The translations under genes were made by a program, and so were the position numbers. Below, in pieces: positions 29,585-47,723 of a stretch of DNA of 64,000 nucleotides. The notes under the pieces were generated by a model. The model saw nothing but the letters and a program-made list of their open reading frames with translations. It was not told where the DNA came from and searched no databases. How positions within the stretch are numbered: the first letter of the stretch is position 1; the number at the start of each line of letters is the position of its first letter. The stretch covers positions 124,001-188,000 of IMG/VR virus record IMGVR_UViG_3300034158_000023. One strand, written 5' to 3'.

Positions 29585-30514
29585 ATGACTAAGAAACGAA
29601 CTAACCAATCTAAAGGTACCGCTATGGAACAGAAAGATACTGCACCAGTTGTTGACACTAATGTTGAAACCTCAGTAGAAGAAGGTGTTGCTACTGAACT
29701 TGATACCAGCGTAGCCCAAGAAGGCGAAGCTACAGGCGAAATCAATACACCTGTAGAATCTGATACTTTAGTTGAAGGTGAAACTGCCACTACTGACAAA
29801 GTTGCTAAGCTTGTAGGTTTGAACGCTGACCATGAGGGCGAATATGATTCATCCGTCTTGCATACTCCTAAAATTGTTAGTGAGATCGATGCAGCTTCAT
29901 TGGAGCAAGCATCTGGCGATGCTACAGATGGTATCACTGAAGGTAGTGTTGCTACTGCTACTGAAGAAACTCCCGCTAGTACAGCTGTAGGTCTAGAAGA
30001 TCTAGATCCTCAACCTAAGCTAGACGAAGAAGAGCAAGAACCTGGTCACTATTATGATCCAGTTGATGACTATTCCGTCTTTGCTCGTAGCCTTCGTGAA
30101 ACCCTGCGTAGCTACACAGTTACTATGGCTCCTAACTACCCAGTAACTCCATCTGAGATGTTGGCGCAACAAGCATCACTGGCACGTAGCTTAAACCGTG
30201 TGTTCAATCACCCTAACGTAGTTGAGTTCCAAGAAGCTATGGACGTATTAGTACGTTCTATGAAAGCGAACCCAGAAACGTTCTCTGTCCGTTATATCAA
30301 TCGCGGTATGGATAATGTAACTCTGAGCGCTGATGCACGTAAGCAATTTGAAACTGTTATGTTCATCCTCCCGATTTCTGTATTAAGTGCGGATGGTCGT
30401 ACACATTACCTCAACTACGGCAGCAAGCTAAGTAGCCTCTTCCCTGAAGACAAAACTGGCGCTGTAGGTAATCGCTTACAATCTTGGATCAAGCGTTATT
30501 TAAGTATTGAATAA
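29585..30514 (+). CDS. Conserved protein with long acidic disordered N-terminus and helical C-domain (phiKZ gp81-like position)
   Basis: About 150 aa of E/T/D-rich region, highly expressed codon usage and a GGAG SD. TATG (late-promoter motif) at 29542. Confidence 0.6.
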   Translation: MTKKRTNQSKGTAMEQKDTAPVVDTNVETSVEEGVATELDTSVAQEGEATGEINTPVESDTLVEGETATTDKVAKLVGLNADHEGEYDSSVLHTPKIVSEIDAASLEQASGDATDGITEGSVATATEETPASTAVGLEDLDPQPKLDEEEQEPGHYYDPVDDYSVFARSLRETLRSYTVTMAPNYPVTPSEMLAQQASLARSLNRVFNHPNVVEFQEAMDVLVRSMKANPETFSVRYINRGMDNVTLSADARKQFETVMFILPISVLSADGRTHYLNYGSKLSSLFPEDKTGAVGNRLQSWIKRYLSIE

Positions 30515-30621: not shown

Positions 30622-31413
30622 ATGCATTTGCCAGATGAGTGTACAGAAAGTAAAAAACCTAATTACCTTGAAATAGCTAATATCCTAGCTACAGAGTTAC
30701 AAGTGGAACTTAAACCGTATTACAGTAAAAATGATAAAGCGCATCAGTGGGATCATGTGCTCCAGGTGTTAGATAACGTGACTTACATTTTCTATCATTT
30801 AGATCGATCTCCTAAGTTGGCGCAGTGGGCTAGTGAGCTAGGTGAAGACATAGTAGTTAGTTTTACAAAAACTGCTATAGCCGCGTTGTATCACGATATG
30901 TTCTCTACGGAGAATCGTAAGGAACATCACGAGCTAGCTAAAGCATTTATCATCAAAGGTGATGATTACCTACTTGCGATAGACAAAGCAGCGCGAGTAC
31001 ACATAGGTCAGATCGCTTCTGAGCACCGTGCAAGCTTTAAAGATGAGTACTCTAGCATCGAGTGTGAAATCTTAGCAGCGGCTGATAGAGGAGCTCCTGA
31101 TGTAGATGCGTACATCATGCGAAGTATTCTCTATGCCCACACTAAACGTAAGTACTCTAAACTGGATAGTCTGGTGCATGGACTAATCCACATCGGACAG
31201 AAGTTTGGTAGCAACAAGAATGCCAAAGTTCCTGACTGGTACGACGATTTCTACAAAGAACAAATTCGTCGTTCTAAAGGTATGTTTGAGTTATGTGGCA
31301 ACACTCAGTTTGATGCTGAGATGGCTATAGGGTTTGTAAGAACATATTTCGATCTAGATACTAAAGTTCGTCAATGGGCAGAAGAAATCGTGTTAGATGG
31401 TTTGCCATGGTAG
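30622..31413 (+). CDS. HD-domain metal-dependent phosphohydrolase
   Basis: H...H (AHQWDH), ALYHD, EHR and AAAD motifs in HD-family order. Confidence 0.8.
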   Translation: MHLPDECTESKKPNYLEIANILATELQVELKPYYSKNDKAHQWDHVLQVLDNVTYIFYHLDRSPKLAQWASELGEDIVVSFTKTAIAALYHDMFSTENRKEHHELAKAFIIKGDDYLLAIDKAARVHIGQIASEHRASFKDEYSSIECEILAAADRGAPDVDAYIMRSILYAHTKRKYSKLDSLVHGLIHIGQKFGSNKNAKVPDWYDDFYKEQIRRSKGMFELCGNTQFDAEMAIGFVRTYFDLDTKVRQWAEEIVLDGLPW

Positions 31414-32220: not shown

Positions 32221-33957
32221 TTATGCTACTTCTTTCTGTGTCTCTTCTACCCCTAGGATAGAATCGTTACTAGCTCCTTGGTTTAGATAAGCGCTGTAGA
32301 TAGCAGTAAGTGCAGGGAACGCATGAATAGTTTCACAATAGTTAATGGCATTAGTTACACCACCACTTAAGTTCAATCCCACTCTACGGCGATCTTCCTC
32401 ACTCACACCTTCGATTTTAACTAACTCTAAAGTTGTAGTACCCTTAGAAGCGTTCATAACGATCTCACCCCATGGGTAAGCTGAACGGATGTCTAAGTCA
32501 GATACATACAAACGAATCAGAGTTTGTAAATCTTCTACGTCTTCAATACACTTAAGACCATTCACTTCGACTAAGTGAGTAGCTAGTGTAATGATCCAAT
32601 CTTCTGTGCCGATAACCAGATCATCTAACTCATCTGCCATCTTATCGGAAACGCAGCAAATAACCCTACCATGTTTCAAGAAGAAGAAATGTAAGTCCTC
32701 TGCTAGCTGTTTAGGTGTAGAGGAGAATAACCTGTAGGGACTAGCACCTACTAGTTCAGATAGAGAAATACTTAAGTCTTTAGTTTTCTCATCTAACAAC
32801 TCCACACCGATACAGTCGAATAAGTTATAGATTAGGTATTCAATCTTATACTTCTTCTGCATGAACTCATGCCAAGCTAACTTAACGTAACCATCAGCAA
32901 AATTAAAGTTCAGCTTACGTTTACCTAAGATCTTCTCTAGGATTGCATCTAACGCATAAGACTTCTCGTTACCTTTAGCCTTACGTAGGAATGCATATGT
33001 GCCCATAGCACAAATCCAGTAAGACTTAGAAGGTGTAATTAACGTATGCCATCTTTCATGCATAGAGAATGTCATTACGCCGCCATCTGCTTTAATGCGG
33101 TTGGCTGGACCTTCAATGTAATTACATTCACGGAACTCTGGATCCACTCCAGGATCACTAAAGTGTATAGCTGGATCAATCCCATCACGTTCTAAGGTTT
33201 GAATCATCTTAGGTACGTCGAAGTTCATGTTCCATGTAGCTACGAAATCAGCACCATATTCGTGTACACGTTTCAGCAACTCAATTACTATCTGAGTGTC
33301 TGATTCTACTTCAACTATCTCTAGTTTGATACCACGAGACTTTTCATACTGACCTAAATGCTCAGAGAACGCTGCACGAATCTTTTCTTCAGCTTTAACG
33401 ATACTACCCATAAACCTTTTAGAATAACAAAGGAATGCTTTATCTTTAAATGTGATAGAGCCTGAAATGATGTCACCCATTTCTTTATGATCACGTCTAC
33501 CACCTAACACGTTGGTCTCTAAGTCGAGTACCGCTATGCTATTAGGACTTACGATATCTTTCCAGGTAGTTAGATACTTAGTTTTAACTAATGCTTCTGG
33601 AGTAATGTCAGTACCGTAGATGTACTGACTTCTACCTAACTGACGCATGTTCAGATTGCTAGTAGGTAGGTTTAAAGCTTTAGCTATCTTCAAAGGCATA
33701 GTAGCGGTGTTGCTGCTACGCTTCTGTAGTCTGGTTAGTGACTCACTTTCTTTTTTGTCTTTATGTTTACGATAACCTTCTTTTGTAATATACCAATCGC
33801 GTTCAAAGTTAACAATCTTTCTAAGATTGGGTTCTCTAGTACCATCAGGTAAATGTTTATACTCTTTTACAAACACAGCATCATTAGAAGGATTATGTTT
33901 AGATTTAACGTAAACTATATGCTTCGCCTCTAACTTAAAATCTTTATCGGTGCTCAC
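32221..33957 (-). CDS. Split B-family DNA polymerase, N-terminal subunit with 3'-5' exonuclease and motif A (phiKZ gp82-like)
   Basis: ExoI DLET, ExoII WNMNFD, ExoIII YNLFD and polymerase motif A DLDIRSAYP. Start reassigned to GTG 33957 (GGGAG SD) to avoid overlap with the divergent gene. Confidence 0.85.
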   Translation of the reverse strand: MSTDKDFKLEAKHIVYVKSKHNPSNDAVFVKEYKHLPDGTREPNLRKIVNFERDWYITKEGYRKHKDKKESESLTRLQKRSSNTATMPLKIAKALNLPTSNLNMRQLGRSQYIYGTDITPEALVKTKYLTTWKDIVSPNSIAVLDLETNVLGGRRDHKEMGDIISGSITFKDKAFLCYSKRFMGSIVKAEEKIRAAFSEHLGQYEKSRGIKLEIVEVESDTQIVIELLKRVHEYGADFVATWNMNFDVPKMIQTLERDGIDPAIHFSDPGVDPEFRECNYIEGPANRIKADGGVMTFSMHERWHTLITPSKSYWICAMGTYAFLRKAKGNEKSYALDAILEKILGKRKLNFNFADGYVKLAWHEFMQKKYKIEYLIYNLFDCIGVELLDEKTKDLSISLSELVGASPYRLFSSTPKQLAEDLHFFFLKHGRVICCVSDKMADELDDLVIGTEDWIITLATHLVEVNGLKCIEDVEDLQTLIRLYVSDLDIRSAYPWGEIVMNASKGTTTLELVKIEGVSEEDRRRVGLNLSGGVTNAINYCETIHAFPALTAIYSAYLNQGASNDSILGVEETQKEVA

Positions 33958-34031
33958 AGTTGTTCTCTCCCTGTCGGTCCGTATATGATGTACATACTGT
34001 GTAAAGTAAAACTTTTTTATGGAGTTATCCC

Positions 34032-35306
34032 ATGTTTCCAGAGAATGTATTTGTCGGCATAGAAGCAATGGCGTATAAAGCCAGAGAAAACTTCTACCCT
34101 CAGTTAGTTACTAAATTCCAGCACGTTTTAGACCATATAGACCTATCTATTCCTCGTCGCATACTGGATTGCAATATCCCTAAATTGGTAGGCGATGAGT
34201 TTAACATGAACGTTACCGTAACTGTAGAGAAGTCCACTCAGTATGGTGCGTACATGATTGCTCCTGATTTAAAAACAAACCACGCCTTATTATCTTCCTG
34301 GCGCAACACCTATTCAGAAGCTGGTGCATCTTTAAAGTATCTAAAGAGTTCTAAACTGAAATCTATCAATGGTTCTGTGTCTAGAGCTACTGGTAAGGTG
34401 TTTGGTGATTTCTCTAAAATACAAGCTCCTATCGTAATGTCAGAAGCTTTATTCGATGGTACGTTTACAGCCAGAGAGCTAGCTTCTATGTTCAGTCATG
34501 AGTTAGGTCACTTCTGGACTTACTTAGAATGTTTAGCCAGAACAGTAACAGCTAACTTAGCCTTAGCAGCAGTGTTACAAGAGTTGACTGGTACGCAAGA
34601 TGTTAAAATGAACTTCCAGTTAATCACAGAACTAGAAAACGTAACTGGTACGAAAATCCCTAACGCCAAGCAAGTAGCTAACTACAGATCAACTGAAAAG
34701 TTACACACCGTAGTAGTGAACGAAGTTTATAAACAAACTGTATCGTCAACTGAATATGGTAGCCTTTATGACCAAGCTGGTTGGGAATCTCAATCGGATA
34801 TGTTTGTTAATCGTCTAGGTGGTGGTAAAGACCTAACCACGGCACTGCACAAAATCCATAAGAAATATGGTGACGCTGCATACTGGGGAGCAACAGGTTG
34901 GTACATCTGGCAAATCCTGTCAGTAGCACTAACTCTGGTAGTGACATGGCCGATCTTATTAGCTGTCTTTTTCGTATTGGCGTTGTCTGGAACTCACCCA
35001 GAGACAAATGAGTATGATACGATTGCCGCTAGATGTAACAGAATCAAGTTGGATATCGTTGGTTCATTGCGCAATAAAGGGCTAGCAAAAGAAGAAGTAA
35101 AACAAACTCTGGCTGACATAGACGAGATTGAAGTAGCTTTAGAAAATGCCGTAGATAGACAACCATGGTTAACAGGTTTAATGGTGGTAGTCTGGAATCC
35201 CTTTAGAAAACAAGCCAAAGAAAAACAGATGCAACAACTTCTGGAAGAACTAGCTAACAACCCACTGTTAATAACCGCAGCTCGCTTTAAAACAGCTGAT
35301 TATTAA
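34032..35306 (+). CDS. Putative internal head protein with M48 (HtpX/Ste24-like) zinc metalloprotease signature and TM segments
   Basis: SHELGH (HExxH) and downstream ESQSDMFV...ALHKI (ExxAD-like). Hydrophobic helices. N-terminal GIE|A resembles the head-protease site. Confidence 0.7.
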   Translation: MFPENVFVGIEAMAYKARENFYPQLVTKFQHVLDHIDLSIPRRILDCNIPKLVGDEFNMNVTVTVEKSTQYGAYMIAPDLKTNHALLSSWRNTYSEAGASLKYLKSSKLKSINGSVSRATGKVFGDFSKIQAPIVMSEALFDGTFTARELASMFSHELGHFWTYLECLARTVTANLALAAVLQELTGTQDVKMNFQLITELENVTGTKIPNAKQVANYRSTEKLHTVVVNEVYKQTVSSTEYGSLYDQAGWESQSDMFVNRLGGGKDLTTALHKIHKKYGDAAYWGATGWYIWQILSVALTLVVTWPILLAVFFVLALSGTHPETNEYDTIAARCNRIKLDIVGSLRNKGLAKEEVKQTLADIDEIEVALENAVDRQPWLTGLMVVVWNPFRKQAKEKQMQQLLEELANNPLLITAARFKTADY

Positions 35307-35317
35307 GGATCATTCCG

Positions 35318-36439
35318 ATGAGATTAAAAATTACTACTAACCGTAATCACGATACGGGGATTGAGGCGTTAGAACAAGAGCTGTCACCTCAAGAGCAACG
35401 CGCTGATGAGTATTTGAAGTTAAATGATACCATTGGTGCCTTAAGAGCTGAACCCTCTGTAAACACACCTACGGAAGGCACAGAGAGCTTCCAGCATAAG
35501 ACAGCATCTACTGAGTCTTTAGTAATTGCTGGTATCATTGCAGCGTCAGCTTTAGTGATGGCGGCTATCTACAAAATCTACAAACACTTTGCAGATAAGC
35601 CAGCCTCAGACAACGCTATCCGTGTAGCTCAAGATCTAGAAGATCTGAAAGACTCCACAGATTTAAATGGTGGTGCTACATCCATTACCTCAAGTGCTGC
35701 TAACAGCGGACATTTGCGTAAAGTGATGGCCTTGTATTTAGCTAGTGTTAAACTCACTACTGATAAGCAAGGTATGTTAATCGGTTTTAAACCAGTGCAC
35801 GAGTTCCTTAACTCAGTACAAGTATTGGTAGCTAAACTAGGTGTACTAGCAGCCGAGAAAACTGGTACGGTTTCAGGTACTCTAAGTAAAGAAGACTTAG
35901 ATACTACTAAATTTGAAACCACATACAACAACGTGATTCGTTTGTTGAATGAATTACAGTGGAAGATGCCAGAAGACTTTAAGAAGTCCTTTGCTATCTC
36001 AGAACCTAAGCTCTTTGTTTTTGGTGGAGAGTATAACTACATCAAAGGTATTGATCTAGCGTTCAGTGAACTTCAAACCCACTTAGCTAAGACTAATGAT
36101 AAAGATGTGGTTACAGCGGCTGAACTGTCTAAGTTGATGTTAAGTCCATCTCTGCGTGAGACTATAGTGCAGTGTGGCAACATCTCTAAAACGTTAGAGT
36201 CAGAAGGTGAAGCTATCTCTAAAGCCGCTGAGAAAGCAGAGACCACCATCAAAGGTTTAGGTCATGACTTAGCTACTACTCAAGATGATATCGAGTTAAA
36301 GAAATTAGCTCTGTATGTTGAGATCGTTAAAGCTACGGCTAACATCTACAAGAAACAAAATTTAATTACCATTGCCGCCGTTAAGTACGTGGAAGAAGTA
36401 GCCAAAGTAATGAAAGCTGCATCTAACACCATCGATTAA
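35318..36439 (+). CDS. Putative internal head/ejection protein
   Basis: Propeptide motifs GIE|A, GTE|S and STE|S, followed by hydrophobic LVIAGIIAASALVMAAIY. Confidence 0.65.
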   Translation: MRLKITTNRNHDTGIEALEQELSPQEQRADEYLKLNDTIGALRAEPSVNTPTEGTESFQHKTASTESLVIAGIIAASALVMAAIYKIYKHFADKPASDNAIRVAQDLEDLKDSTDLNGGATSITSSAANSGHLRKVMALYLASVKLTTDKQGMLIGFKPVHEFLNSVQVLVAKLGVLAAEKTGTVSGTLSKEDLDTTKFETTYNNVIRLLNELQWKMPEDFKKSFAISEPKLFVFGGEYNYIKGIDLAFSELQTHLAKTNDKDVVTAAELSKLMLSPSLRETIVQCGNISKTLESEGEAISKAAEKAETTIKGLGHDLATTQDDIELKKLALYVEIVKATANIYKKQNLITIAAVKYVEEVAKVMKAASNTID

Positions 36440-36450
36440 GGATTTCTACA

Positions 36451-36816
36451 ATGATCACCCAAGACCAGATTAACATGCTCGTTAGTTTTCTTCGCAACGG
36501 AGAAAAGAAGTCATCTCGTGGTAAGTTGTTAACTATTGCCATCGCGTATTCTATCCCTGTAGCGCAGACTAGCGAAGATAGTCTTAAGAGTTTCCCAGGC
36601 TATTTCACTACTGCCTGTGAAGCGTTGAGCAAAATCAATGAAGAACACATCATCCCGATTAAACAAATCACGGAAGACATCCGTAAGACGTTTTTCTATC
36701 GCATCACGGCGTTTGATCTACCTCAGGTTGAAATCCCCGCAGTGTTATCCGATTTAGATGGTGACGACATTTTTGATTTGTCGACATTGAAGCGCAACTT
36801 AAAAGACATTTTCTAG
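36451..36816 (+). CDS. Small conserved protein in head-protein operon
   Basis: 121 aa with TAAGGA SD. Confidence 0.6.
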   Translation: MITQDQINMLVSFLRNGEKKSSRGKLLTIAIAYSIPVAQTSEDSLKSFPGYFTTACEALSKINEEHIIPIKQITEDIRKTFFYRITAFDLPQVEIPAVLSDLDGDDIFDLSTLKRNLKDIF

Positions 36817-36870
36817 CATAACCTTGATCCATGGGTAGCGCCATGGATCATTTGCCTTAAGGAATTTATT

Positions 36871-38274
36871 ATGTTCGATTATGCTGAATACGATAAAGCG
36901 CAAAAAGCCTTAACCGTTTTACGCGATATCCAAGAGAACGTTAAAGTAAACGGTGTGTCTAGAGCCGATATCACATATGCTCTAGAAGCCGCCGAGATTT
37001 TCAAACTCCCTAATCGGTACCCAGTTAACTCATTCACTGCTGAAGCTAGTAGCACTAATTTAGACGTGGCTCTAGAAAGTCTATCTGAAGGTCAACGCCT
37101 AGGTTACTCTATTTTAACTGGTGTGATCGTAGGTCTCTTAGCTAAGATCATTTCTTATTTTTTCACTGGTGGTAGTAGCGGTGGTTCTGGTAGTTCGGCT
37201 CCGTACATTGCAAAGCAGAACCACACTCTGGAACAATTCGCAAATCTTAAAAAGATTGCTGTGTTGGAAAGAGAGAGAGCTGACGAGATAGCATCTATGG
37301 GTGTTAGACGTAAAGCTATGCGTAAAGTGCTAGGAGATGTAGAGATCTCTGAGTACATGTTGCAACATCCCTATACACGGATTGCATTTGAAACCTTGTG
37401 TTCTCATAACGCTAAGTTTAGAAAATGTACTTCGTTTTTAGGTGAGCTCCAGAAACGTGAAAACCTTCGAAGCATTTATGTCTTCATTATGCAAGAGCTA
37501 AATGATTCTTTGTTAGAGATGATCGAAACTGCTGATGCCATTAAAGAGTGGGTGTACGCTCGTCGTCGTGGTGGCAACAGAGAAAAAGTAATCGAGCCAC
37601 GTTTGCAGATCCCTGGCCCAATGTTAGATCGCTTTATTGCACGTGGTACTAAATCAGTCCATGGCTGGTTAGCAGCTAACAATATCGTTGGCCCTGGCAT
37701 GATGATTGATGTTACGCCACCAGATGAGTACAAAGGGGTACCTATCCCAACGGAAGATATCCCGTTGTTCTTACTGATCGAAACATTTAAGTTTATGAAT
37801 CAGATGAGCAGTGATCCTACAGGCATCAAGTTTGCGGAACCTACTGACTATCTAGATCGTTTAATCACAGCAAAAGAAAAACTGTTGCTGCGGGTTACTA
37901 GTTCTACGGTGTTAGAAGAATGGGAACCTTTACCTAATGCTACGCCTAAAGACTACGATCCAATGGACAGAGCTACTTTACTTAACAAACGTGTAAGTAA
38001 AGCGTACGATAAGACTGAGTGGAATACTCTTTTCTCTAAGCCTAAACCTGATGGTAAGGATGGCGATGAAGAGAGCGATTGGTTTGTAGGGGAAAGTTGG
38101 AAGTTAGTGGATATCTATTTTGACGGAGTACAGAGTCTCTATAAAGAATCTGCAATTCTGTTGAAGATGGCTAACGATATTATTTCTGGTATGCATGACG
38201 CTTTGCGCATCGTGGACAAGTATCAGAAAGAACTCAAAACTGAAACTAAAGAAACTGAACCTGCTGCTGAGTAG
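36871..38274 (+). CDS. Putative internal head/ejection protein
   Basis: ALE|A and ALE|S motifs, then hydrophobic ILTGVIVGLLAKIISYFF and a Gly/Ser linker. Confidence 0.65.
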   Translation: MFDYAEYDKAQKALTVLRDIQENVKVNGVSRADITYALEAAEIFKLPNRYPVNSFTAEASSTNLDVALESLSEGQRLGYSILTGVIVGLLAKIISYFFTGGSSGGSGSSAPYIAKQNHTLEQFANLKKIAVLERERADEIASMGVRRKAMRKVLGDVEISEYMLQHPYTRIAFETLCSHNAKFRKCTSFLGELQKRENLRSIYVFIMQELNDSLLEMIETADAIKEWVYARRRGGNREKVIEPRLQIPGPMLDRFIARGTKSVHGWLAANNIVGPGMMIDVTPPDEYKGVPIPTEDIPLFLLIETFKFMNQMSSDPTGIKFAEPTDYLDRLITAKEKLLLRVTSSTVLEEWEPLPNATPKDYDPMDRATLLNKRVSKAYDKTEWNTLFSKPKPDGKDGDEESDWFVGESWKLVDIYFDGVQSLYKESAILLKMANDIISGMHDALRIVDKYQKELKTETKETEPAAE

Positions 38275-38315: not shown

Positions 38316-41213
38316 TTATTCCTTGTGGGCTATGAAGTCTACCAAGATAGCTTCTTCTATGCCTAGGGATGCGTTTGACAGCACCTTAAGGTTACGTCTA
38401 ACACTACAGCGAGTAGCTTCATCCACAGCAGTGAATGTAGAGATATCTCTATCTGGGCCCATAGGATCCATTTCAATACTCAACACGTCACCCTTGATAG
38501 CCACTTTAAGCATATCTGTAATACCAGCAATACTTACCGTAGCTTCTTTCAAAGCTTCGTTAATAACTCGCTTAGTAGTTTTAGTTATGCTTTCACGCAA
38601 TAGTAGATTACCGTAGTTAAGTCTAGTCATGTAGTAAGTAACCACAAAACTTAATCTAGCAGGAATCTCCACAACCACGTTACTACCTACAATTACTTTG
38701 TTCTGTCCTAAAGACTTCTTAGGATAGTAGTAAAGTTCAGTCTTAGCATGGAGTTGTGGTTTAATCGAGTTTAACTTACCAGATAAGAACTCTAATACAG
38801 TATCAGCAATAGTGTTTCTGTAAGCCACATCAGTTACACTGTTACTAAAGTAATAAGCTCCATCTACTAAAAACAAATCTATTTGACGATCTGTTTTCCT
38901 AGGTTTAACTACGATAGGTAAACCACTTTCATCATAAACCACGTCAGAGGCTTTAGCTTTGTAAACTACCTGCCCGTCGTCGTCTAATAAAGGATCACCC
39001 TTATGGATTAGCACGTTGTACTTAGCTTCTCCGTTCTCTATCCAGATTTTAGGTAACCCAGTTATTGGATCAGTTTCTAAAATGGTGTCTGGGTAAGTGT
39101 AAGGTACATCCACCCCGTATGTGGCATACTGCACGCTACTATCAACGGTTCTGCCATTACTCCACAAGTTAGTAAGAGCCTCACCAAACTTCAGCTCCAC
39201 AGACTCCTGTACAATCCCCACAACTTCATCAGGCAACAAGTGTCTACCTAATCGTAAGTCGATGTCACTCTTACTTAAGCCGTAGATAGAGTAATCAGAA
39301 ACCCCATAGATCAAACTGAACTTCTCAGTTAACCCACAACCGAAGTTACGTACTTGGTCAGAGAACATACTGAAGTTATTCAACATTATTAAATCTCTAC
39401 TATCGATATCTAAAGTAGTTTTAATAGTGAATTCCCAAATAGCGTTACCTTCCTCAGTAACTGCTTTAAGTACCCCATTTAAAAACGCTGGGTTGTTTTC
39501 TTTATCTGGAATGAAACTTAATTGACAGAACAGTTTCTCCATAGGCAAGTCTTGGTAGTTATCACCAGACAGAACCTCGATCGTCAATACCCAGTTGTCG
39601 CCTTTTCTAACAAACGAAAGTTTATTAGTGGCTACGTTAAGTTGAGTAGTGTCGTTCTCTAAGATAAACTGTCTGCTAGTTACGTTAGCATTACCTAAGT
39701 AATAAGCACGGCAATCGAAAGAGTTACCAGTTGCATCCAGTACATAGTGGAATGGCGAATACATAAACTCAGTAGAGTTCACAGCAGTAGCCAAAGCATC
39801 ATTAGACAACCCTAGATAGAAAGGGTGTTCCAAGTTTGACACCACAGTTACAATACCGTTCTCACTTTTATAGAGAGTATCGGGAGTTACAGTTAAACGT
39901 AATCCGTTGTCTCTAGTGTTAGATGAGGTAGCCAGATCATCCATGTTGGTTTGTAACGTACCAATCATACAAGCTGCCCCTGAAGTAAACTCAGAGTTAG
40001 CAACCGCAGGTAGATGTCGAGTAGCTTGATAAACACGACGCATCAAGTTGTCGATACTAAGAATGATAGTAAACCCATCAATTTCAAAGTTAGTACGTAG
40101 CTGCGCTTCAGTGATTGGGTTAGTAGTGCGGTTAGCATTCTCAATAGAACGTTTACGCGCTTCCTCAAAGGTTAGTCCACTACGACCACCGTTAACCTTA
40201 CCGTCACCAGCAATACCCATCACACTCCAAGATTCCAAAGGAGTATAATAAATAGAATCAGTGATGTCAGTAAACCCTTTACCATACTCTAGCGAGAACG
40301 CATTAGATACGTACTCACCCATATCTAAATTAACTGGGCCTTTAGAGGTGTAGATAATGATCTTAATCTGAGGAGGCAACTTACCTTCACTGAAATAGAT
40401 TCTAGGGATAGTTACCCGTAAAGAATTACCAGAGTAACGTAATAAAGCAGTATTGACCCGCTTGTCGTAAATTAACTCACTGTGAGTAGTTACGAACGGT
40501 GTCTCTACTCCAGATGCACTAATACCAATCACTTCACAGTGGTAGAAGTTATCAGAAAGAGCATACGCTTTATTAAAACCTACAGATGGGTTTAGAGTAT
40601 CGAAAAACTCTTTTCTATCTAACTGCACTAGCTGGATTGGTAAGTTGATCATCTCAACTTCACTTAACACACCTTGTTTCCATTCCACGATGTTTGTTTC
40701 TAGTGGACGGATTACGCTTTGTACAGTACTGTCGTAAACTACTTGAATGCCACCGTGAGACATTACCCGGATCTCAATTGGGTAGAGAGTCATAAACGGG
40801 ATACCAGTTACGGTAATTTTAGTGTACTTAGGAATAATTAATTTACGTACTCCAGTATCACCTACCTTAACTGCTTTAGCGTAGATCTCATCCTTACTAA
40901 AGTAAACGTTAAAGTTACCGACAGCATAAGTGCAGAACAGGTTAAGGTAATCCACATCAGCCATATGGCGATACAGATCTTCCCATGACTCTACAGTAGA
41001 CTTCTCTACCTTAGTCAATGCAGTCTCCATGCGAATCAAAGCAGCAGCCGCTAATTCACTACCCATCTCTAACGTAAACACAAATGGGTTAGTAGCATCA
41101 ACTAAGTCAGTAGCTCCTGCCATAATGGATTCTAAACGCTCAAACTGGTAACGCTGAAATGTTGCTGGGGAATAACCAGTCTTTAGTAGCGTATCAATAA
41201 TTCCAGTCATCAT
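38316..41213 (-). CDS. Large baseplate wedge protein (phiKZ gp87-like; T4 gp6-like)
   Basis: 965 aa. IIPKYTKIT and GGRSGLTFEEAR...AN...ITEAQL resemble baseplate-J/gp6 GG.d.Es.e..R...a....vT..D. Synteny supports this. Confidence 0.7.
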   Translation of the reverse strand: MMTGIIDTLLKTGYSPATFQRYQFERLESIMAGATDLVDATNPFVFTLEMGSELAAAALIRMETALTKVEKSTVESWEDLYRHMADVDYLNLFCTYAVGNFNVYFSKDEIYAKAVKVGDTGVRKLIIPKYTKITVTGIPFMTLYPIEIRVMSHGGIQVVYDSTVQSVIRPLETNIVEWKQGVLSEVEMINLPIQLVQLDRKEFFDTLNPSVGFNKAYALSDNFYHCEVIGISASGVETPFVTTHSELIYDKRVNTALLRYSGNSLRVTIPRIYFSEGKLPPQIKIIIYTSKGPVNLDMGEYVSNAFSLEYGKGFTDITDSIYYTPLESWSVMGIAGDGKVNGGRSGLTFEEARKRSIENANRTTNPITEAQLRTNFEIDGFTIILSIDNLMRRVYQATRHLPAVANSEFTSGAACMIGTLQTNMDDLATSSNTRDNGLRLTVTPDTLYKSENGIVTVVSNLEHPFYLGLSNDALATAVNSTEFMYSPFHYVLDATGNSFDCRAYYLGNANVTSRQFILENDTTQLNVATNKLSFVRKGDNWVLTIEVLSGDNYQDLPMEKLFCQLSFIPDKENNPAFLNGVLKAVTEEGNAIWEFTIKTTLDIDSRDLIMLNNFSMFSDQVRNFGCGLTEKFSLIYGVSDYSIYGLSKSDIDLRLGRHLLPDEVVGIVQESVELKFGEALTNLWSNGRTVDSSVQYATYGVDVPYTYPDTILETDPITGLPKIWIENGEAKYNVLIHKGDPLLDDDGQVVYKAKASDVVYDESGLPIVVKPRKTDRQIDLFLVDGAYYFSNSVTDVAYRNTIADTVLEFLSGKLNSIKPQLHAKTELYYYPKKSLGQNKVIVGSNVVVEIPARLSFVVTYYMTRLNYGNLLLRESITKTTKRVINEALKEATVSIAGITDMLKVAIKGDVLSIEMDPMGPDRDISTFTAVDEATRCSVRRNLKVLSNASLGIEEAILVDFIAHKE

Positions 41214-44877: not shown

Positions 44878-46284
44878 ATGAGACGTTTACCCCTCCGTGC
44901 AAAAGCAGGGTTAGAATCGGGCGACGGCGAGTTAGACTTGACATCTACAGACCCTGTAGACATGTCGGAGTTTGAATCTGAAGCTAGCGCTGTAGCCGAA
45001 CACACCCGTGAGGTAACTGATGCCAATGAAGCAGTGATGGGCTTAGAAGCCATTGCTATGGGCATTCAGTCTACTCTGAAAGGCCGTGGTTTAGATCGTA
45101 ATGCCGCTATGTTTGCTCACATCGCTACTGCTGCATATTGCGACCGTCTGCGTGTGAACAACCCATTGCCTTCTTTGGAAAACTTTGGTGCTACTACTTC
45201 ACAGCTCACGATGACTCGTGCTGGCCTAGAAGATGTTAAGCAAAAGATCAAAGATGCTTGGAAATGGATCATTGATCTGTTACAGTCCGGCATCCGTAAA
45301 GTAAATGAGTATTATCAGCGTGTTTGGGCTCAAGCTCCACGTTTGATTACTAAAGCGCAAGCTATCTCTAAACAGGTGTCTGAACTGAAAACAGGTAAGT
45401 CTAAAGATGGTAAAAACATCGACGTAGACAAATCTTCTTTCACTACTGTACACGTAGCCAAAGCCGTAGATGGTGCTGGCCTTGTAGGTGGCATGAAGCA
45501 GTTAGAAAGCATCAGTGGTGATATCTTTGTTGATTACGTCAAGAAAGTTACTGACTGGGGCGATCAAGTCGTAACCAGTACTACTGACATCGATTATGCT
45601 GATGACAACCGTTTCACTGAAACTGTCAATAAGCTGATGGAGCACAAGCTAGAAACTGATAAGTTAGTAGCTGCTGCAACTGTTGCTTCTCAAGCTGGTC
45701 CTAATGCAGGCGGTAAAGAAACTCCTGAAATTATGGGCGGCAAGAAAATCTTCGTTAAAATCGGTGCCGATGTATCTGCTGAGAAAGCTCCTGGTACTGA
45801 AGACGACCAAACTGGTACTGCTCCAGGCGCAGAAAAAACAGCTGGCGCTACTGTAGTCCTAGCCGATTGGCGTGGTTTCGTAAACCCATTATCTGATACA
45901 CGTGTGTATTTAGGTTCTGCTTATGAAACTGAACCAGAGCTAAGCGACAAATCAGTTGCAACCTTTGAAGCTCAACAAATTGGTAGTATCGCAGCTTCTG
46001 CTGAAGCATTGTGTACTATTATTATGAACTACAAAGCAGGTAATAAGCGCGCCAATGATTTACGTCAAAAGGCCATTACCGCAGCTAAGCGTGCTCAAAC
46101 TAACGCCGTCAAAGCTGACGACCTTAGCAAAGACAACGCGACAGTGGCTGGTCAGTTGAATAAAGTTGTTGCTGCTGTAAACACTTTGTTAACTCAGCCA
46201 AACCAAGAGTTCAGTGCGCACATGTTACGTGTCACTAACGTATGTCTGCAATTGTGTGAAAAGTCTTTAGCTAATTACAAATAA
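44878..46284 (+). CDS. Internal head (inner body/ejection) protein, phiKZ gp93-97 paralog family
   Basis: Acidic propeptide with GLE|S, GLE|A, SLE|N and GLE|D. WKWIIDLLQSGIRKVNEYYQRVW helix typical of the family. Confidence 0.7.
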   Translation: MRRLPLRAKAGLESGDGELDLTSTDPVDMSEFESEASAVAEHTREVTDANEAVMGLEAIAMGIQSTLKGRGLDRNAAMFAHIATAAYCDRLRVNNPLPSLENFGATTSQLTMTRAGLEDVKQKIKDAWKWIIDLLQSGIRKVNEYYQRVWAQAPRLITKAQAISKQVSELKTGKSKDGKNIDVDKSSFTTVHVAKAVDGAGLVGGMKQLESISGDIFVDYVKKVTDWGDQVVTSTTDIDYADDNRFTETVNKLMEHKLETDKLVAAATVASQAGPNAGGKETPEIMGGKKIFVKIGADVSAEKAPGTEDDQTGTAPGAEKTAGATVVLADWRGFVNPLSDTRVYLGSAYETEPELSDKSVATFEAQQIGSIAASAEALCTIIMNYKAGNKRANDLRQKAITAAKRAQTNAVKADDLSKDNATVAGQLNKVVAAVNTLLTQPNQEFSAHMLRVTNVCLQLCEKSLANYK

Positions 46285-46370: not shown

Positions 46371-47723
46371 ATGAAATTACGTATTAATGGCGCAAGCGGT
46401 TTTTCAGCTGGTTTAGAAGATGCAGAAGTTGAAGCTGGTATGTCAGAAGGCGAAGCTGCGATTGCTGCTGCTGAAACTGCTACTGACGTAGCTGAAATCG
46501 AAAGCGACCTTACCAACGCCACTCGTCTTGAAGATCAAGCCGAAGGTATGGAAGACGCTGCTGAAGTTATCGACGGCATCGAACGCGCTACTCCAGGTGA
46601 AGTTCAACTTGCAGACGTGGCTTCTAGCCTAGCAACTGCTGGTACTGACGCTGAAGTTGAAATCTTCGAAGATGCTCCAGAAGGCGAAGCAGTATCTGTG
46701 GAATCTTTCACTAATCGTAAGATTGGTACTGAAGGTCTGAAAGAAATGGCTCAGAAGTTCTGGGCTGAAGTTAAGCGCCTTGTTGCCAAAGCTTGGGAAG
46801 CTATTCTCAAATTCTGGCGTAAAGTGACTGACCAAGTTCCAGGTGTTGTTAAAGCTGCTCGTTCTCTGCGTACTCGCGCTGAAGATGCCGCTGGTAAATC
46901 ACTTAAGTCTGAAGACAAGAAACTCAAAGCTGGCTCTGCTGGTTTAGCGTTAGTCTTAGGCGACAGTTACCCAACTTCTGCTGGCGATGTTACTAAAGCC
47001 GTTGAAAACATGACTGCTGTAGCTAAAATCGTTTTAGATGCTGATGCTAAATCAGTACACGAAGGCGGCGAAGCTTTACAATCTGCTATCAACGATTTCG
47101 ATGTTGAGAAAGCAGAAGAGTCACTGAAGAAAGTAACTGACAAAGTTAAAGCTGGCGGTTTCGGTCAATCTGGCGCATGTAAAACTGCAATCGGTTCAGA
47201 CAGCCGTTACGGTAACGGTTTAACTGCAACTAAGTCTGTTGATCTTCCAGGCGGCGTGATCCTTGTTGCTTCTAAAGCACCAAATGAATCTAACGGTGGT
47301 CTGTTAGGTTGGGCTGCTGCGTTACGTTCACAATCAGTTGCCGTTGTACACCACAACGACAAAGACAAAAAGTCTATCACTGAGAAAGACGTAACTACCT
47401 TGTCTCTGCAAGAGATCAAGAAAGTTGCTGATCAAGCCGAAGATCTTGCACTGGTTGTTAAAGGTTTCCAAGAGAAGCATTTACGTAAACTGGAACAAGC
47501 ATCTAACAAGATGAAAGGCGCTGGTGACAAAGTTGCGAAACAAGTCACTGAAGAAACTCCAGCTCTTGCTCAAAAGCAATATCAAGCCGCTCTGCGTTTC
47601 GTTACTGCATACGCTGCATGGTCTGCTTCTCCATTCAACCGTATCGCACAGATGTCTCTGACAACTGCTCGCGCTGCTATTGAAGTGGGTAACAAGTCTG
47701 TTGGTAAATACTCAGCTGCTTAA
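46371..47723 (+). CDS. Internal head (inner body/ejection) protein, paralog of upstream gene
   Basis: GLE|D, SVE|S and GTE|G motifs. FWAEVKRLVAKAWEAILKFWRKV helix. Strong high-expression codon bias. Confidence 0.75.
   Translation: MKLRINGASGFSAGLEDAEVEAGMSEGEAAIAAAETATDVAEIESDLTNATRLEDQAEGMEDAAEVIDGIERATPGEVQLADVASSLATAGTDAEVEIFEDAPEGEAVSVESFTNRKIGTEGLKEMAQKFWAEVKRLVAKAWEAILKFWRKVTDQVPGVVKAARSLRTRAEDAAGKSLKSEDKKLKAGSAGLALVLGDSYPTSAGDVTKAVENMTAVAKIVLDADAKSVHEGGEALQSAINDFDVEKAEESLKKVTDKVKAGGFGQSGACKTAIGSDSRYGNGLTATKSVDLPGGVILVASKAPNESNGGLLGWAAALRSQSVAVVHHNDKDKKSITEKDVTTLSLQEIKKVADQAEDLALVVKGFQEKHLRKLEQASNKMKGAGDKVAKQVTEETPALAQKQYQAALRFVTAYAAWSASPFNRIAQMSLTTARAAIEVGNKSVGKYSAA

What the first reader, a model, noticed from the sequence alone, without database searches (positions are those of the whole stretch)
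34032..35306. M48 (HtpX/Oma1/Ste24-type) membrane zinc protease signature in an apparent capsid-packaged protein
Seen: HELGH, then WESQSDMFVNRLGGGKDLTTALHKI (matches the M48 ExxAD...L..AL.KL pattern), hydrophobic helices (LALAAVL; QILSVALTLVVTWPILLAVFFVLALSG), and N-terminal GIE|A. Known: phiKZ-like head proteins are matured after S/A/G-x-E and many are ejected with the DNA; early infection proceeds in a membrane (EPI) vesicle. Inference: an ejected intramembrane protease that remodels the host inner membrane, processes EPI-vesicle proteins or destroys membrane-bound defence sensors.
Basis: partly seen in the sequence, partly recalled or inferred. Interest (0 to 1): 0.65.

Follow-up and report, generated by a model that had tools for sequence, protein, structure and literature searches.

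The report
Packaged M48-like zinc protease, jumbo phage
This gene encodes the chimallivirus (phiKZ-like) head protein known as phiKZ gp84 or SPN3US gp45, a divergent M48-type zinc protease with a greasy membrane-type segment; the protease prediction is real but already published, and what the enzyme cuts, and where, is still unknown.

Summary
It is the ortholog of phiKZ gp84, SPN3US gp45 and SEGD1 gp047.

Across 27 orthologs at 17-48% identity the HELGH motif, the distal Glu motif (E252, D256, R261) and the N-terminal E11 are invariant. A profile of the family best matches human ZMPSTE24 among solved structures, with both catalytic motifs in order. AlphaFold models have M48 proteases as their top three structural matches (Z 7.7-9.2).

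SPN3US gp45 is a proven head protein, cut by the prohead protease after ASE-20. That site aligns with GIE-11 here, and this genome encodes the same type of protease.

"Intramembrane" is not supported. The catalytic residues lie in a soluble domain. The only membrane-type element is one conserved hydrophobic helix-break-helix downstream (residues 282-323). LALAAVL is not a transmembrane segment.

Ejection, and any role at the early-infection (EPI) vesicle, remain untested.

Iyer et al. (2021) already described this family as a conserved uncharacterised zincin metallopeptidase, and some GenBank records call it M48. It is therefore a new member of a known but biochemically uncharacterised family.

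Its downstream neighbours have a protease cleavage motif placed directly before a transmembrane helix.

The parts
34032..35306 (+). CDS of the M48-like head metallopeptidase (424 aa; ortholog of phiKZ gp84, SPN3US gp45, SEGD1 gp047; phrog_2767)
34032..34064 (+). Predicted 11-residue N-terminal propeptide (capsid-targeting-sequence-like), ending in GIE-11, the predicted prohead-protease site
   Evidence: E11 is invariant in 27 orthologs. It aligns to the MS-verified ASE-20 cleavage of SPN3US gp45 (PMC10052503 Table 2). A gp175-type protease is present in the genome.
34083..34883 (+). Predicted soluble catalytic region (residues 18-284): N-terminal alpha/beta part, active-site helix, a helical insert of about 90 residues, and the 'glutamate helix'
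   Evidence: Domain model pLDDT 84.2, pTM 0.80. Structural matches: Ste24p Z 9.2, ZMPSTE24 Z 8.7, BepA Z 7.7. Foldseek top 10 are all ZMPSTE24/Ste24p.
34497..34511 (+). HELGH (residues 156-160): two zinc-binding His and the catalytic Glu
   Evidence: Invariant in all orthologs. Aligns to H335/E336/H339 of ZMPSTE24.
34785..34814 (+). Distal motif E252-x3-D256-x4-R261: predicted third zinc ligand, on the glutamate helix
   Evidence: E, D and R are invariant. Most orthologs read E-x-x-A-D-x-F-A-x-R. Aligns to ZMPSTE24 412-441, which includes E415.
34875..35000 (+). Uncharged hydrophobic helix-Pro-helix segment (residues 282-323; model helices 287-303 and 306-319; near-invariant P307): candidate membrane-inserting hairpin
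   Evidence: KD maximum 2.62. A hydrophobic span is present in 27/27 orthologs, median 34 residues, with a central Pro/Gly; the sequence is not conserved. Secondary structure.
35013..35291 (+). C-terminal helical bundle (residues 328-420) with invariant R334 and E405 and near-invariant Y328, D329, N410, L412; role unknown
   Evidence: only generic helical-bundle fold matches
35318..36439 (+). Co-oriented 373-aa gene with no detectable homolog; GIE-16/ALE-19 motifs, and STE-66 placed directly before a transmembrane helix (65-88)
36451..36816 (+). 121-aa gene, weakly similar to phiKZ gp85 and the PCH45 154-aa protein (positional analog of SPN3US gp46)
   Evidence: E 0.003-0.004 only
36871..38274 (+). 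467-aa gp47-like head protein: ALE-69, then 7 residues, then a transmembrane helix (77-99)
   Evidence: N-terminal region is homologous to the PCH45 460-aa protein, including the ALE site and the TM (E 3e-7). Same architecture as SPN3US gp47, whose ALE-111 cleavage is MS-verified.
32221..33957 (-). Divergently transcribed phiKZ-type DNA polymerase (phrog_3011). The mechanical ORF runs to a TTG at 34068, but a GTG at 33957 fits where the family match begins.
   Evidence: synteny
38316..41213 (-). phiKZ gp87 homolog (baseplate wedge protein); convergent end of the conserved gene block
   Evidence: 33% identity, E 1e-167; gp87 role from PMC13250141

Best explanation
The gene encodes the chimallivirus core head protein of the phiKZ gp84 / SPN3US gp45 family. 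It is a divergent M48-like (gluzincin) zinc metallopeptidase.

Proposed course of events:
1. It is made late in infection.
2. An 11-residue, T4-CTS-like N-terminal propeptide takes it into the prohead. The gp175-type prohead protease removes the propeptide after GIE-11.
3. The protein is stored inside the capsid.
4. Its catalytic domain is soluble, with H156/H160/E252 binding zinc and E157 as general base. It is followed by a hydrophobic helix-break-helix and a helical bundle.
5. Most likely it leaves the head with the DNA, as T4 CTS-bearing internal proteins do. The hydrophobic hairpin then anchors it from one side in the membrane of the entry compartment (inner membrane or EPI vesicle). There it cuts membrane-proximal protein substrates, as M48 enzymes generally do.

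Shown here or in orthologs: motif conservation, M48-like fold, head location and N-terminal cleavage of orthologs, the protease gene in this genome, and the conserved hydrophobic segment.

Inferred: zinc binding and activity, ejection, membrane insertion, and the substrates.

My confidence in the identity part (a packaged, processed M48-like metallopeptidase) is about 0.85. For the whole chain, including action at a membrane after ejection, it is about 0.4.
For: - HExGH, E252, D256 and R261 are invariant in 27 orthologs at 17-48% identity and in five annotated phages.
- The family profile's best PDB hit is ZMPSTE24 (E 2e-4), with both motifs colinear.
- PF01435 is the commonest Pfam hit among orthologs (12/27).
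- hhalign against a YcaL/LoiP/BepA alignment gives 85% probability.
- Structural matches are headed by Ste24p, ZMPSTE24 and BepA, followed by minigluzincins, SPRTN, 3c37 and BlaR1.
- SPN3US gp45 is a head protein cleaved at ASE-20, and is the only one with a T4-CTS-length propeptide (PMC5694885 and PMC10052503).
- phiKZ gp84 is annotated as a structural head protein.
- The genome encodes a gp175-type prohead protease.
- A hydrophobic span is present in 27/27 orthologs, with only its hydrophobicity conserved.
- Adjacent gp47-like genes carry a cleavage motif directly before a transmembrane helix, and SPN3US gp47 is an essential head protein.
- All in-head cleavages mapped in SPN3US fit the single AXE motif of the serine protease. 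This argues against a second protease being active inside heads.
Against: - No member reaches Pfam's M48 gathering score (13.4 vs 20.3 bits here; best ortholog E 0.0019).
- Fold-match Z scores of 8-9 are only moderately above the tool's stated noise range, and global TM-scores are low.
- I could not measure the zinc-site geometry, because model coordinates are not exposed.
- No paper I could read reports injection of gp84 or gp45. It is absent from the gp93 interactome text, the validated injected set and the phiKZ structural atlas.
- The hydrophobic span ranges from 19 to 49 residues, so the topology is unsettled. It could instead be a buried core or a protein-protein interface inside the capsid.
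Confidence: 0.4

Rival explanations
1. In-head maturation or clean-up peptidase. The enzyme acts inside the prohead alongside the serine prohead protease. It would degrade released propeptides and scaffold fragments, or make extra maturation cuts, and is not needed after ejection (the suggestion of Iyer et al. 2021).
For: - Iyer et al. proposed this for AMR59696.1, which I verified is the SEGD1 ortholog in the same syntenic slot.
- The protein is in heads.
- phiKZ-like heads lose very large propeptides.
- Minimal M48-like gluzincins act on unfolded peptides (established knowledge of the minigluzincin structures that appear).
Against: - All 14 cleavage sites mapped in SPN3US heads fit the AXE motif of gp245. 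Multiple cuts within propeptides are also AXE sites, so no second specificity is seen.
- It does not explain a hydrophobic membrane-type segment conserved in 27/27 orthologs.
Confidence: 0.2
2. Structural ejectosome or channel component. The hydrophobic hairpin, together with the gp47-like transmembrane proteins, builds a conduit or membrane-remodelling assembly at entry. The zincin fold would serve as a scaffold, or would only self-process.
For: - The gene is clustered with gp47-like genes whose transmembrane helix follows a protease site.
- gp47 is essential.
- By established knowledge, the ejection proteins of T7 and P22 use hydrophobic segments to span the envelope.
Against: Strict invariance of every catalytic residue (H, E, H, E) over very deep divergence is hard to explain without catalysis.
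Confidence: 0.12
3. Assembly tether. The hydrophobic segment places the newly made protein in the host inner membrane, where procapsids are initiated. The protease domain would release or process assembly factors there. The protein would be incorporated in heads only as a by-product.
For: - The conserved hydrophobic segment.
- From my own knowledge, earlier work places chimallivirus capsid assembly at the cell membrane. This is a lead rather than a test: the Goslar preprint says 'in the host cytoplasm'.
Against: - A CTS-like propeptide cleaved by the prohead protease indicates deliberate internal packaging.
- The protein is consistently detected in purified heads.
Confidence: 0.08
4. A chance HExxH in a non-enzymatic head protein.
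For: HExxH alone is common: a second one sits in the neighbouring polymerase ORF. Pfam scores are below threshold.
Against: Two-motif invariance in 27 or more orthologs, colinear alignment to ZMPSTE24, and M48 proteases topping two independent fold searches.
Confidence: 0.03

Closest known systems
phiKZ gp84 / SPN3US gp45 / SEGD1 gp047 (AMR59696.1) family, phrog_2767
   Same: - Orthologs: full-length match to phrog_2767 (E 5e-75).
- Same gene order: DNA polymerase (-), this gene, a gp85-like gene, (a gp47/gp86-position gene), gp87 (-).
- Same motifs, same hydrophobic segment, and the same N-terminal Glu cleavage position.
   Different: - Only 20-28% identical to any cultured phage.
- The closest relatives (81-93%) are uncultivated contigs.
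- The distal motif has Ser where most have Ala (E-S-Q-S-D), as in PCH45.
- An extra 373-aa gene is inserted directly downstream.
Ste24p / ZMPSTE24 (peptidase family M48A)
   Same: Best sequence-profile and fold matches. HExxH and the E-x-x-A-D-x-F-A...L..L.KL block align in order, with similar spacing of the ligands.
   Different: - Ste24 is a seven-helix membrane barrel with the active site in an intramembrane chamber.
- Here there are no transmembrane helices around the active site, only one hydrophobic hairpin after the domain.
- There is a soluble helical insert of about 90 residues between the motifs.
- Identity is 14-20%.
BepA, YcaL, LoiP (soluble or lipoprotein periplasmic M48 proteases of E. 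coli) and HtpX
   Same: - Soluble M48 catalytic domain acting next to membranes.
- BepA Z 7.7 with rmsd 3.7 A.
- hhalign 85% probability on the strand plus HExxH-helix block.
- Two GenBank records label orthologs 'M48 family lipoprotein protease' and 'beta-barrel assembly-enhancing protease'.
   Different: - No signal peptide, lipobox or TPR domain.
- HtpX has its hydrophobic hairpin between the two motifs, whereas here it follows both.
- The profile alignment does not extend to the Glu motif.
T4 internal head proteins with a capsid targeting sequence (IPI-III, Alt)
   Same: A short N-terminal propeptide ending in Glu is removed by the prohead protease. The SPN3US authors made this comparison for gp45 (PMC5694885). 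T4 examples are injected enzymes or inhibitors (established knowledge).
   Different: There is no sequence relationship. Injection has not been shown for this family.
Minigluzincins (proabylysin, projannalysin, selecase) and BlaR1/MecR1 (M56)
   Same: The same minimal gluzincin core: HExxH helix plus glutamate helix (Z 5.8-6.2).
   Different: They score lower than M48. Minigluzincins have about 100 residues and no extra domains. BlaR1 has four transmembrane helices and a sensor domain.

Membership tests
Peptidase family M48 (MEROPS) / Pfam PF01435 | HExxH zinc-binding and catalytic motif on the active-site helix, preceded by the strand-loop block typical of M48 | tested here: met
   HELGH at residues 156-160 is invariant. 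It aligns to PF01435 positions 47-78, to ZMPSTE24 325-339 and to YcaL/LoiP/BepA.
Peptidase family M48 (MEROPS) / Pfam PF01435 | Third zinc ligand: a Glu in an E-x-x-A-D type motif 60-100 residues downstream | tested here: met
   E252, D256 and R261 are invariant. Orthologs mostly read E-x-x-A-D-x-F-A-x-R; the window protein has Ser at the Ala position. The spacing of 95-96 residues is constant. It aligns to ZMPSTE24 E415.
Peptidase family M48 (MEROPS) / Pfam PF01435 | Score at or above the curated Pfam gathering threshold | tested here: not met
   13.4 bits against a 20.3-bit cut-off. 12 of 27 orthologs hit at E<=0.1, best 0.0019, none over the threshold. 15.2 bits in the genome scan. In the ESM Atlas, 15-18% of the members of two related viral clusters do carry PF01435.
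Peptidase family M48 (MEROPS) / Pfam PF01435 | M48/gluzincin catalytic fold | tested here: met
   In the Foldseek-independent search the top three of 48,161 chains are Ste24p (Z 9.2), ZMPSTE24 (8.7) and BepA (7.7). Nine of the top ten are zinc peptidases (whole model). The Foldseek top ten are all ZMPSTE24/Ste24p, with probability 0.7-0.99 but E about 0.01. The strength is moderate, not overwhelming.
Peptidase family M48 (MEROPS) / Pfam PF01435 | Zinc binding and proteolytic activity | not testable with these tools
   This needs purified protein.
   There is a single hydrophobic segment at 282-323, downstream of both motifs. No segment near HExxH reaches KD 1.5, and LALAAVL is part of a long soluble helix.
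SprT-like / Wss1 / SPRTN zincins (PF10263) | HExxH followed by a third His ligand a few residues downstream (HExxHx5H) | tested here: not met
   No His follows H160, and position 166 is a non-invariant Glu. There are weak Pfam hits in 5/27 orthologs (best E 1e-4), and SPRTN scores Z 6.5, below M48.
Prohead-protease-processed internal head proteins of phiKZ-like phages | N-terminal propeptide ending in S/A/G-x-E at a conserved position | tested here: met
   GIE-11. E11 is invariant in 27 orthologs and aligns to the MS-verified ASE-20 of SPN3US gp45 and to SNE-10 of phiKZ gp84.
Prohead-protease-processed internal head proteins of phiKZ-like phages | The cognate gp175/gp245-type prohead protease is encoded by the same genome | tested here: met
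   G000:C1:59693-60298, 41% identical to phiKZ gp175, E 3.6e-41.
Prohead-protease-processed internal head proteins of phiKZ-like phages | Physical presence in purified heads or virions | not testable with these tools
   This is an uncultivated phage (an IMG/VR record). Presence is shown only for orthologs: SPN3US gp45 in virions and tailless heads, and phiKZ gp84 annotated as a structural head protein.
Ejection (injected) proteins of chimalliviruses | Transfer into the host cell with the DNA, and co-localisation with the EPI vesicle | not testable with these tools
   No report was found for this family. The complement of injected proteins is stated to be unknown.

The most novel reading that the evidence does not exclude
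The gp84/gp45-family enzyme is an injected M48-like protease anchored in the membrane by its hydrophobic hairpin. Together with the neighbouring gp47-like proteins, it forms a membrane-active entry module. In the gp47-like proteins the prohead protease trims the propeptide to leave a transmembrane helix about 7 residues from the new N-terminus, a fusion-peptide-like unmasking. The module would shape, maintain or open the EPI vesicle, or clip host inner-membrane proteins, including membrane-bound defence sensors.
Probability: 0.25. Interest if true: 0.8.

Novelty: new member of a known kind. Interest (0 to 1): 0.4.

Why it matters
How chimalliviruses build the membrane-bound early-infection vesicle, and which packaged proteins are injected to do so, are stated open questions (Goslar structure preprint). 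This family is a conserved, apparently active protease inside the capsid that also carries a membrane-type segment. It sits next to an essential head protein whose transmembrane helix lies just after a maturation cleavage. That makes it one of the few packaged proteins with a predicted enzymatic activity and a plausible link to membranes, so it is a concrete candidate to test in phiKZ, SPN3US, PCH45 or Goslar. The experimental papers still list it as 'unknown function', although a comparative-genomics paper flagged the zincin fold in 2021. Connecting the two is useful but is not a discovery. If it acts only inside the head, it is an ordinary accessory maturation enzyme.

Tried and rejected
- Megablast of 4 kb around the gene against 50,697 phage records gave no match, so there is no close cultured relative.
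- The search for related loci with the 19-sequence alignment failed for lack of a conserved word. Two sub-alignments worked.
- NCBIfam gave nothing relevant.
- The Pfam T4-gp21 model (PF03420) rang nowhere, including the control genomes, so it was uninformative. I replaced it with a direct phiKZ gp175 query.
- hhalign against single HtpX and BepA sequences was underpowered (61% and 18% probability, HExxH block only). A three-sequence template gave 85%, but the alignment still did not reach the Glu motif.
- The SprT-like reading was rejected because there is no third His.
- Literature: no mention of gp84/PHIKZ084 function in the EPI-vesicle preprint, the phiKZ structural atlas, the interaction-proteomics paper or the Goslar structure preprint.
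- Not held: Thomas et al. 2012 (phiKZ head proteolysis), and the supplementary tables of Iyer 2021 and of the PCH45 Tn-seq preprint. The essentiality of the PCH45 ortholog (QFP93086.1) and virion copy numbers therefore could not be read.
- Model coordinates are not exposed, so zinc-ligand distances and the packing of the hydrophobic hairpin could not be measured.
- The 373-aa and 467-aa neighbours are not detectable paralogs of each other. The 467-aa protein shows no significant BLAST match to phiKZ gp86 or, on its own, to SPN3US gp47.
Full report
**1. What is there**

The window is bases 124001-188000 of a 215,386-bp uncultivated virus record with direct terminal repeats. It is a chimallivirus (phiKZ-like jumbo phage). 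The window holds:
- the phiKZ-type major capsid protein;
- two phiKZ_IP internal head proteins;
- head-tail joining proteins;
- the divergent DnaB-like helicase;
- the phiKZ-type DNA polymerase;
- a gp87 baseplate-wedge homolog.

The ORF at 34032-35306 (+) encodes 424 residues. It has a GGAG ribosome-binding site 7 nt upstream of the ATG.

**2. Which protein it is**

- It matches phrog_2767 over its full length (E 5e-75; function listed as unknown).
- tblastn finds it in 211 phage records, all below 60% identity and all phiKZ-like phages. These include phiKZ gp84, PhiPA3 gp086, a 201phi2-1 virion protein, an SPN3US virion structural protein (gp45) and PCH45.
- Gene order is conserved: DNA polymerase on the minus strand, this gene, a small gp85-like gene, one or two larger head-protein genes, then gp87 on the minus strand.
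- The closest relatives (81-93% identity) are unnamed metagenomic contigs.

**3. Is the protease signature real?**

HExxH alone is not beyond chance. A second HExxH lies in the neighbouring polymerase ORF. The two-motif pattern, however, occurs in only this ORF of the window and in 8 of 20,000 shuffles of the protein.

Conservation is the stronger evidence. I aligned 27 orthologs: 15 from the word-index search, including the window protein, and 12 from IMG/VR loci. They are 17-48% identical to the window protein outside its near relatives. The invariant residues are E11, G125, H156, E157, L158, G159, H160, E252, D256, R261, R334 and E405. Most orthologs read E-x-x-A-D-x-F-A-x-R at the distal motif. 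The window protein and PCH45 have Ser at the Ala position. The spacing between the two motifs is constant at 95-96 residues.

**4. Is it M48?**

Sequence evidence:
- Pfam gives only sub-threshold hits: PF01435 at 13.4 bits against a cut-off of 20.3, and SprT-like at 13.8 bits.
- PF01435 is the commonest hit among orthologs (12 of 27), but none passes the threshold.
- A profile of the family searched against all PDB sequences has human ZMPSTE24 as its best hit (E 2e-4). HELGH aligns onto H335-H339, and the distal block onto 412-441, which contains the third zinc ligand E415.
- hhalign against a YcaL/LoiP/BepA alignment gives 85% probability, but only over the strand plus HExxH-helix block. Single-sequence templates were underpowered.

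Structure evidence:
- The whole-protein AlphaFold model has pLDDT 76.6 and pTM 0.77.
- The catalytic region alone (residues 18-284) has pLDDT 84.2 and pTM 0.80.
- Foldseek ranks only ZMPSTE24 and Ste24p in its top ten (E about 0.01, probability up to 0.99).

The Foldseek-independent search of 48,161 chains, run on the domain model, gave this ranking (the whole-model search agrees):

| Chain | Z |
|---|---|
| Ste24p | 9.2 |
| ZMPSTE24 | 8.7 |
| BepA | 7.7 |
| SPRTN | 6.5 |
| M48 protein 3c37 | 6.3 |
| selecase | 6.2 |
| jannalysin | 6.1 |
| abylysin | 6.0 |
| BlaR1 | 5.8 |

These Z values are moderate. What carries weight is the consistent family ranking together with the colinear, invariant ligands.

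ESM Atlas neighbours are all viral, and 15-18% of the members of two related clusters carry PF01435.

My conclusion is that this is a divergent, phage-specific M48-like gluzincin. It works like an M48 enzyme by every testable criterion but falls below the curated family threshold. The SprT-like reading fails because there is no third His.

**5. Is it membrane-embedded?**

No. The only segment of transmembrane-level hydrophobicity is residues about 282-323 (KD maximum 2.62), which lies after both catalytic motifs. LALAAVL (176-182) is part of a long soluble helix.

The model shows two helices (287-303 and 306-319) separated by a near-invariant proline. All 27 orthologs have an uncharged hydrophobic span here, with a median of 34 residues and a range of 19-49, usually with a central Pro or Gly. 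The sequence itself is not conserved, as is typical of lipid-facing segments.

So the architecture has five parts:
- a short propeptide;
- a soluble catalytic domain with a helical insert of about 90 residues;
- a hydrophobic helix-break-helix;
- a C-terminal helical bundle;
- invariant R334 and E405 within that bundle, of unknown role.

A hairpin would keep both soluble parts on the same side of a membrane. It could therefore insert from one side without a translocon. The spread in length leaves the topology open.

**6. Is it capsid-packaged and N-terminally cleaved?**

For orthologs, yes:
- SPN3US gp45 is found in virions and in tailless heads.
- It is listed as 'Head, unknown function' (PMC10052503 Table 2).
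- Its 20-residue propeptide is the only one of T4 capsid-targeting-sequence length (PMC5694885).
- The phiKZ homologs of the conserved cleaved proteins are also cleaved.
- phiKZ gp84 is annotated as a structural head protein.

In my alignment the SPN3US cleavage Glu falls on the invariant E11 of the window protein, giving GIE-11 followed by Ala. The window's genome encodes a phiKZ gp175-type prohead protease (41% identity, E 3.6e-41). Packaging and cleavage in this phage are therefore well-founded inferences, not observations.

**7. Prior knowledge**

Iyer et al. [quoted passage not shown] I verified that AMR59696.1 is SEGD1 gp047. It sits in the same syntenic slot and is homologous to the window protein over 364 residues, including both motifs and the hydrophobic segment (E 2e-26).

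GenBank records already label orthologs 'putative M48 family lipoprotein protease', 'beta-barrel assembly-enhancing protease' and 'peptidase'.

No paper I could read reports activity, a substrate, injection or a mutant phenotype for this family.

**8. How it most likely works**

Shown or strongly inferred: it is a packaged, N-terminally trimmed M48-like zinc peptidase with a conserved membrane-type segment.

Beyond that there are two main readings.

(a) It is delivered with the DNA and anchors by its hairpin in the membrane of the entry compartment, where it cuts membrane-proximal substrates. The arguments for this are:
- the T4-CTS-like propeptide; T4 proteins with such a sequence are injected effectors (established knowledge);
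- the universal hydrophobic segment;
- the fact that characterised M48 enzymes work at or beside membranes;
- the neighbouring gp47-like genes (section 9);
- the observation that all in-head cleavages mapped in SPN3US fit the single AXE motif of the serine protease.

(b) It works inside the prohead as an accessory maturation or clean-up peptidase, as Iyer et al. suggested. This does not explain the hydrophobic segment or the absence of a second cleavage specificity.

I put (a) at about 0.4 and (b) at about 0.2. A structural ejectosome role is about 0.12, an assembly-tether role about 0.08, and a chance motif about 0.03. The remainder is unassigned.

**9. Neighbourhood observation**

The 467-aa gene (36871-38274) has ALE-69 followed 7 residues later by a transmembrane helix. 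Its N-terminal region, including that site and the helix, is homologous to the PCH45 460-aa protein (E 3e-7).

The same 'ALE, then 6-8 residues, then a transmembrane helix' layout occurs in SPN3US gp47 and in two IMG/VR phages, making 5 of 15 loci with downstream sequence. In SPN3US gp47 the ALE-111 cleavage is MS-verified, and the protein is an essential head protein.

The lineage-specific 373-aa gene (35318-36439) has STE-66 directly before a transmembrane helix.

Among the window's 48 ORFs of 150 aa or more, only these two show this layout.

This suggests that maturation cleavage leaves a hydrophobic helix near the new N-terminus of packaged proteins. It supports the idea of a membrane-active module around the protease gene, but does not prove it.

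**10. Verdict**

The M48-like and capsid-packaged parts of the interpretation are supported. 'Intramembrane' is not supported. Ejection and targets are open.

The family-level protease prediction is already in the literature and in database annotation. This is therefore a new, uncultivated member of a known but biochemically uncharacterised family. It is of moderate interest as an experimental candidate for early-infection membrane biology.

Noticed in passing
window 36871-38274 (+); also L002:7440-9173, L018:7762-9144, L006:7466-9100, L012:9449-10666: gp47-like head proteins share a conserved layout: ALE (a prohead-protease motif), then 6-8 residues, then a strong transmembrane helix. In SPN3US gp47 the ALE-111 cleavage is MS-verified and the gene is essential. 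Maturation would therefore leave a hydrophobic helix almost at the new N-terminus, which resembles the unmasking of a fusion peptide.
   Followed up: partly
window 35318-36439 (+): A 373-aa gene is inserted between the M48-like gene and the gp85-like gene. It has no PHROG or Pfam hit and no detectable homolog in PCH45 or in the 467-aa neighbour. It carries GIE-16/ALE-19 motifs, and STE-66 directly before a transmembrane helix (65-88). It may be a lineage-specific packaged membrane protein.
   Followed up: partly
window 33957-34068: The mechanical DNA-polymerase ORF (minus strand) starts at a TTG at 34068 and would overlap the start of the M48-like gene by 37 nt. The PHROG match begins at residue 39, and an in-frame GTG at 33957 would leave a 74-bp divergent intergenic region instead.
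   Followed up: partly
window 29585-30514 (+): A 309-aa protein (phrog_18957) has an acidic, low-complexity N-terminal third that carries at least seven S/A/G-x-E motifs. It looks like another head protein with a long, multiply cleaved propeptide.
   Followed up: no
window 30622-31413 (+): A 263-aa protein has a sub-threshold HD-domain match (PF01966, E 0.0017) and belongs to phrog_3921. It may be a phage phosphohydrolase.
   Followed up: no
window 44878-46284 and 46371-47723 (+): Two tandem phiKZ_IP (PF12699) internal head protein paralogs lie a few kb downstream. This is the family whose members are injected with the DNA in phiKZ and Goslar.
   Followed up: no
window 36825-36850 (+) and 38308-38285 (-): Two 10-bp-stem terminator-like hairpins. 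One follows the 121-aa gene, which suggests that the genes from 34032 to 36816 form one transcription unit. The other lies at the convergent junction between the 467-aa gene and the gp87 homolog.
   Followed up: no
residues 328-420 of the protein (window 35013-35291): The C-terminal helical bundle carries strictly or nearly invariant residues (Y328, D329, R334, E405, N410, L412; consensus Q-Q-L-L-E-E-L-A-N-N near the end). No known M48 feature explains them. They could mark an autoinhibitory or partner-binding element.
   Followed up: no
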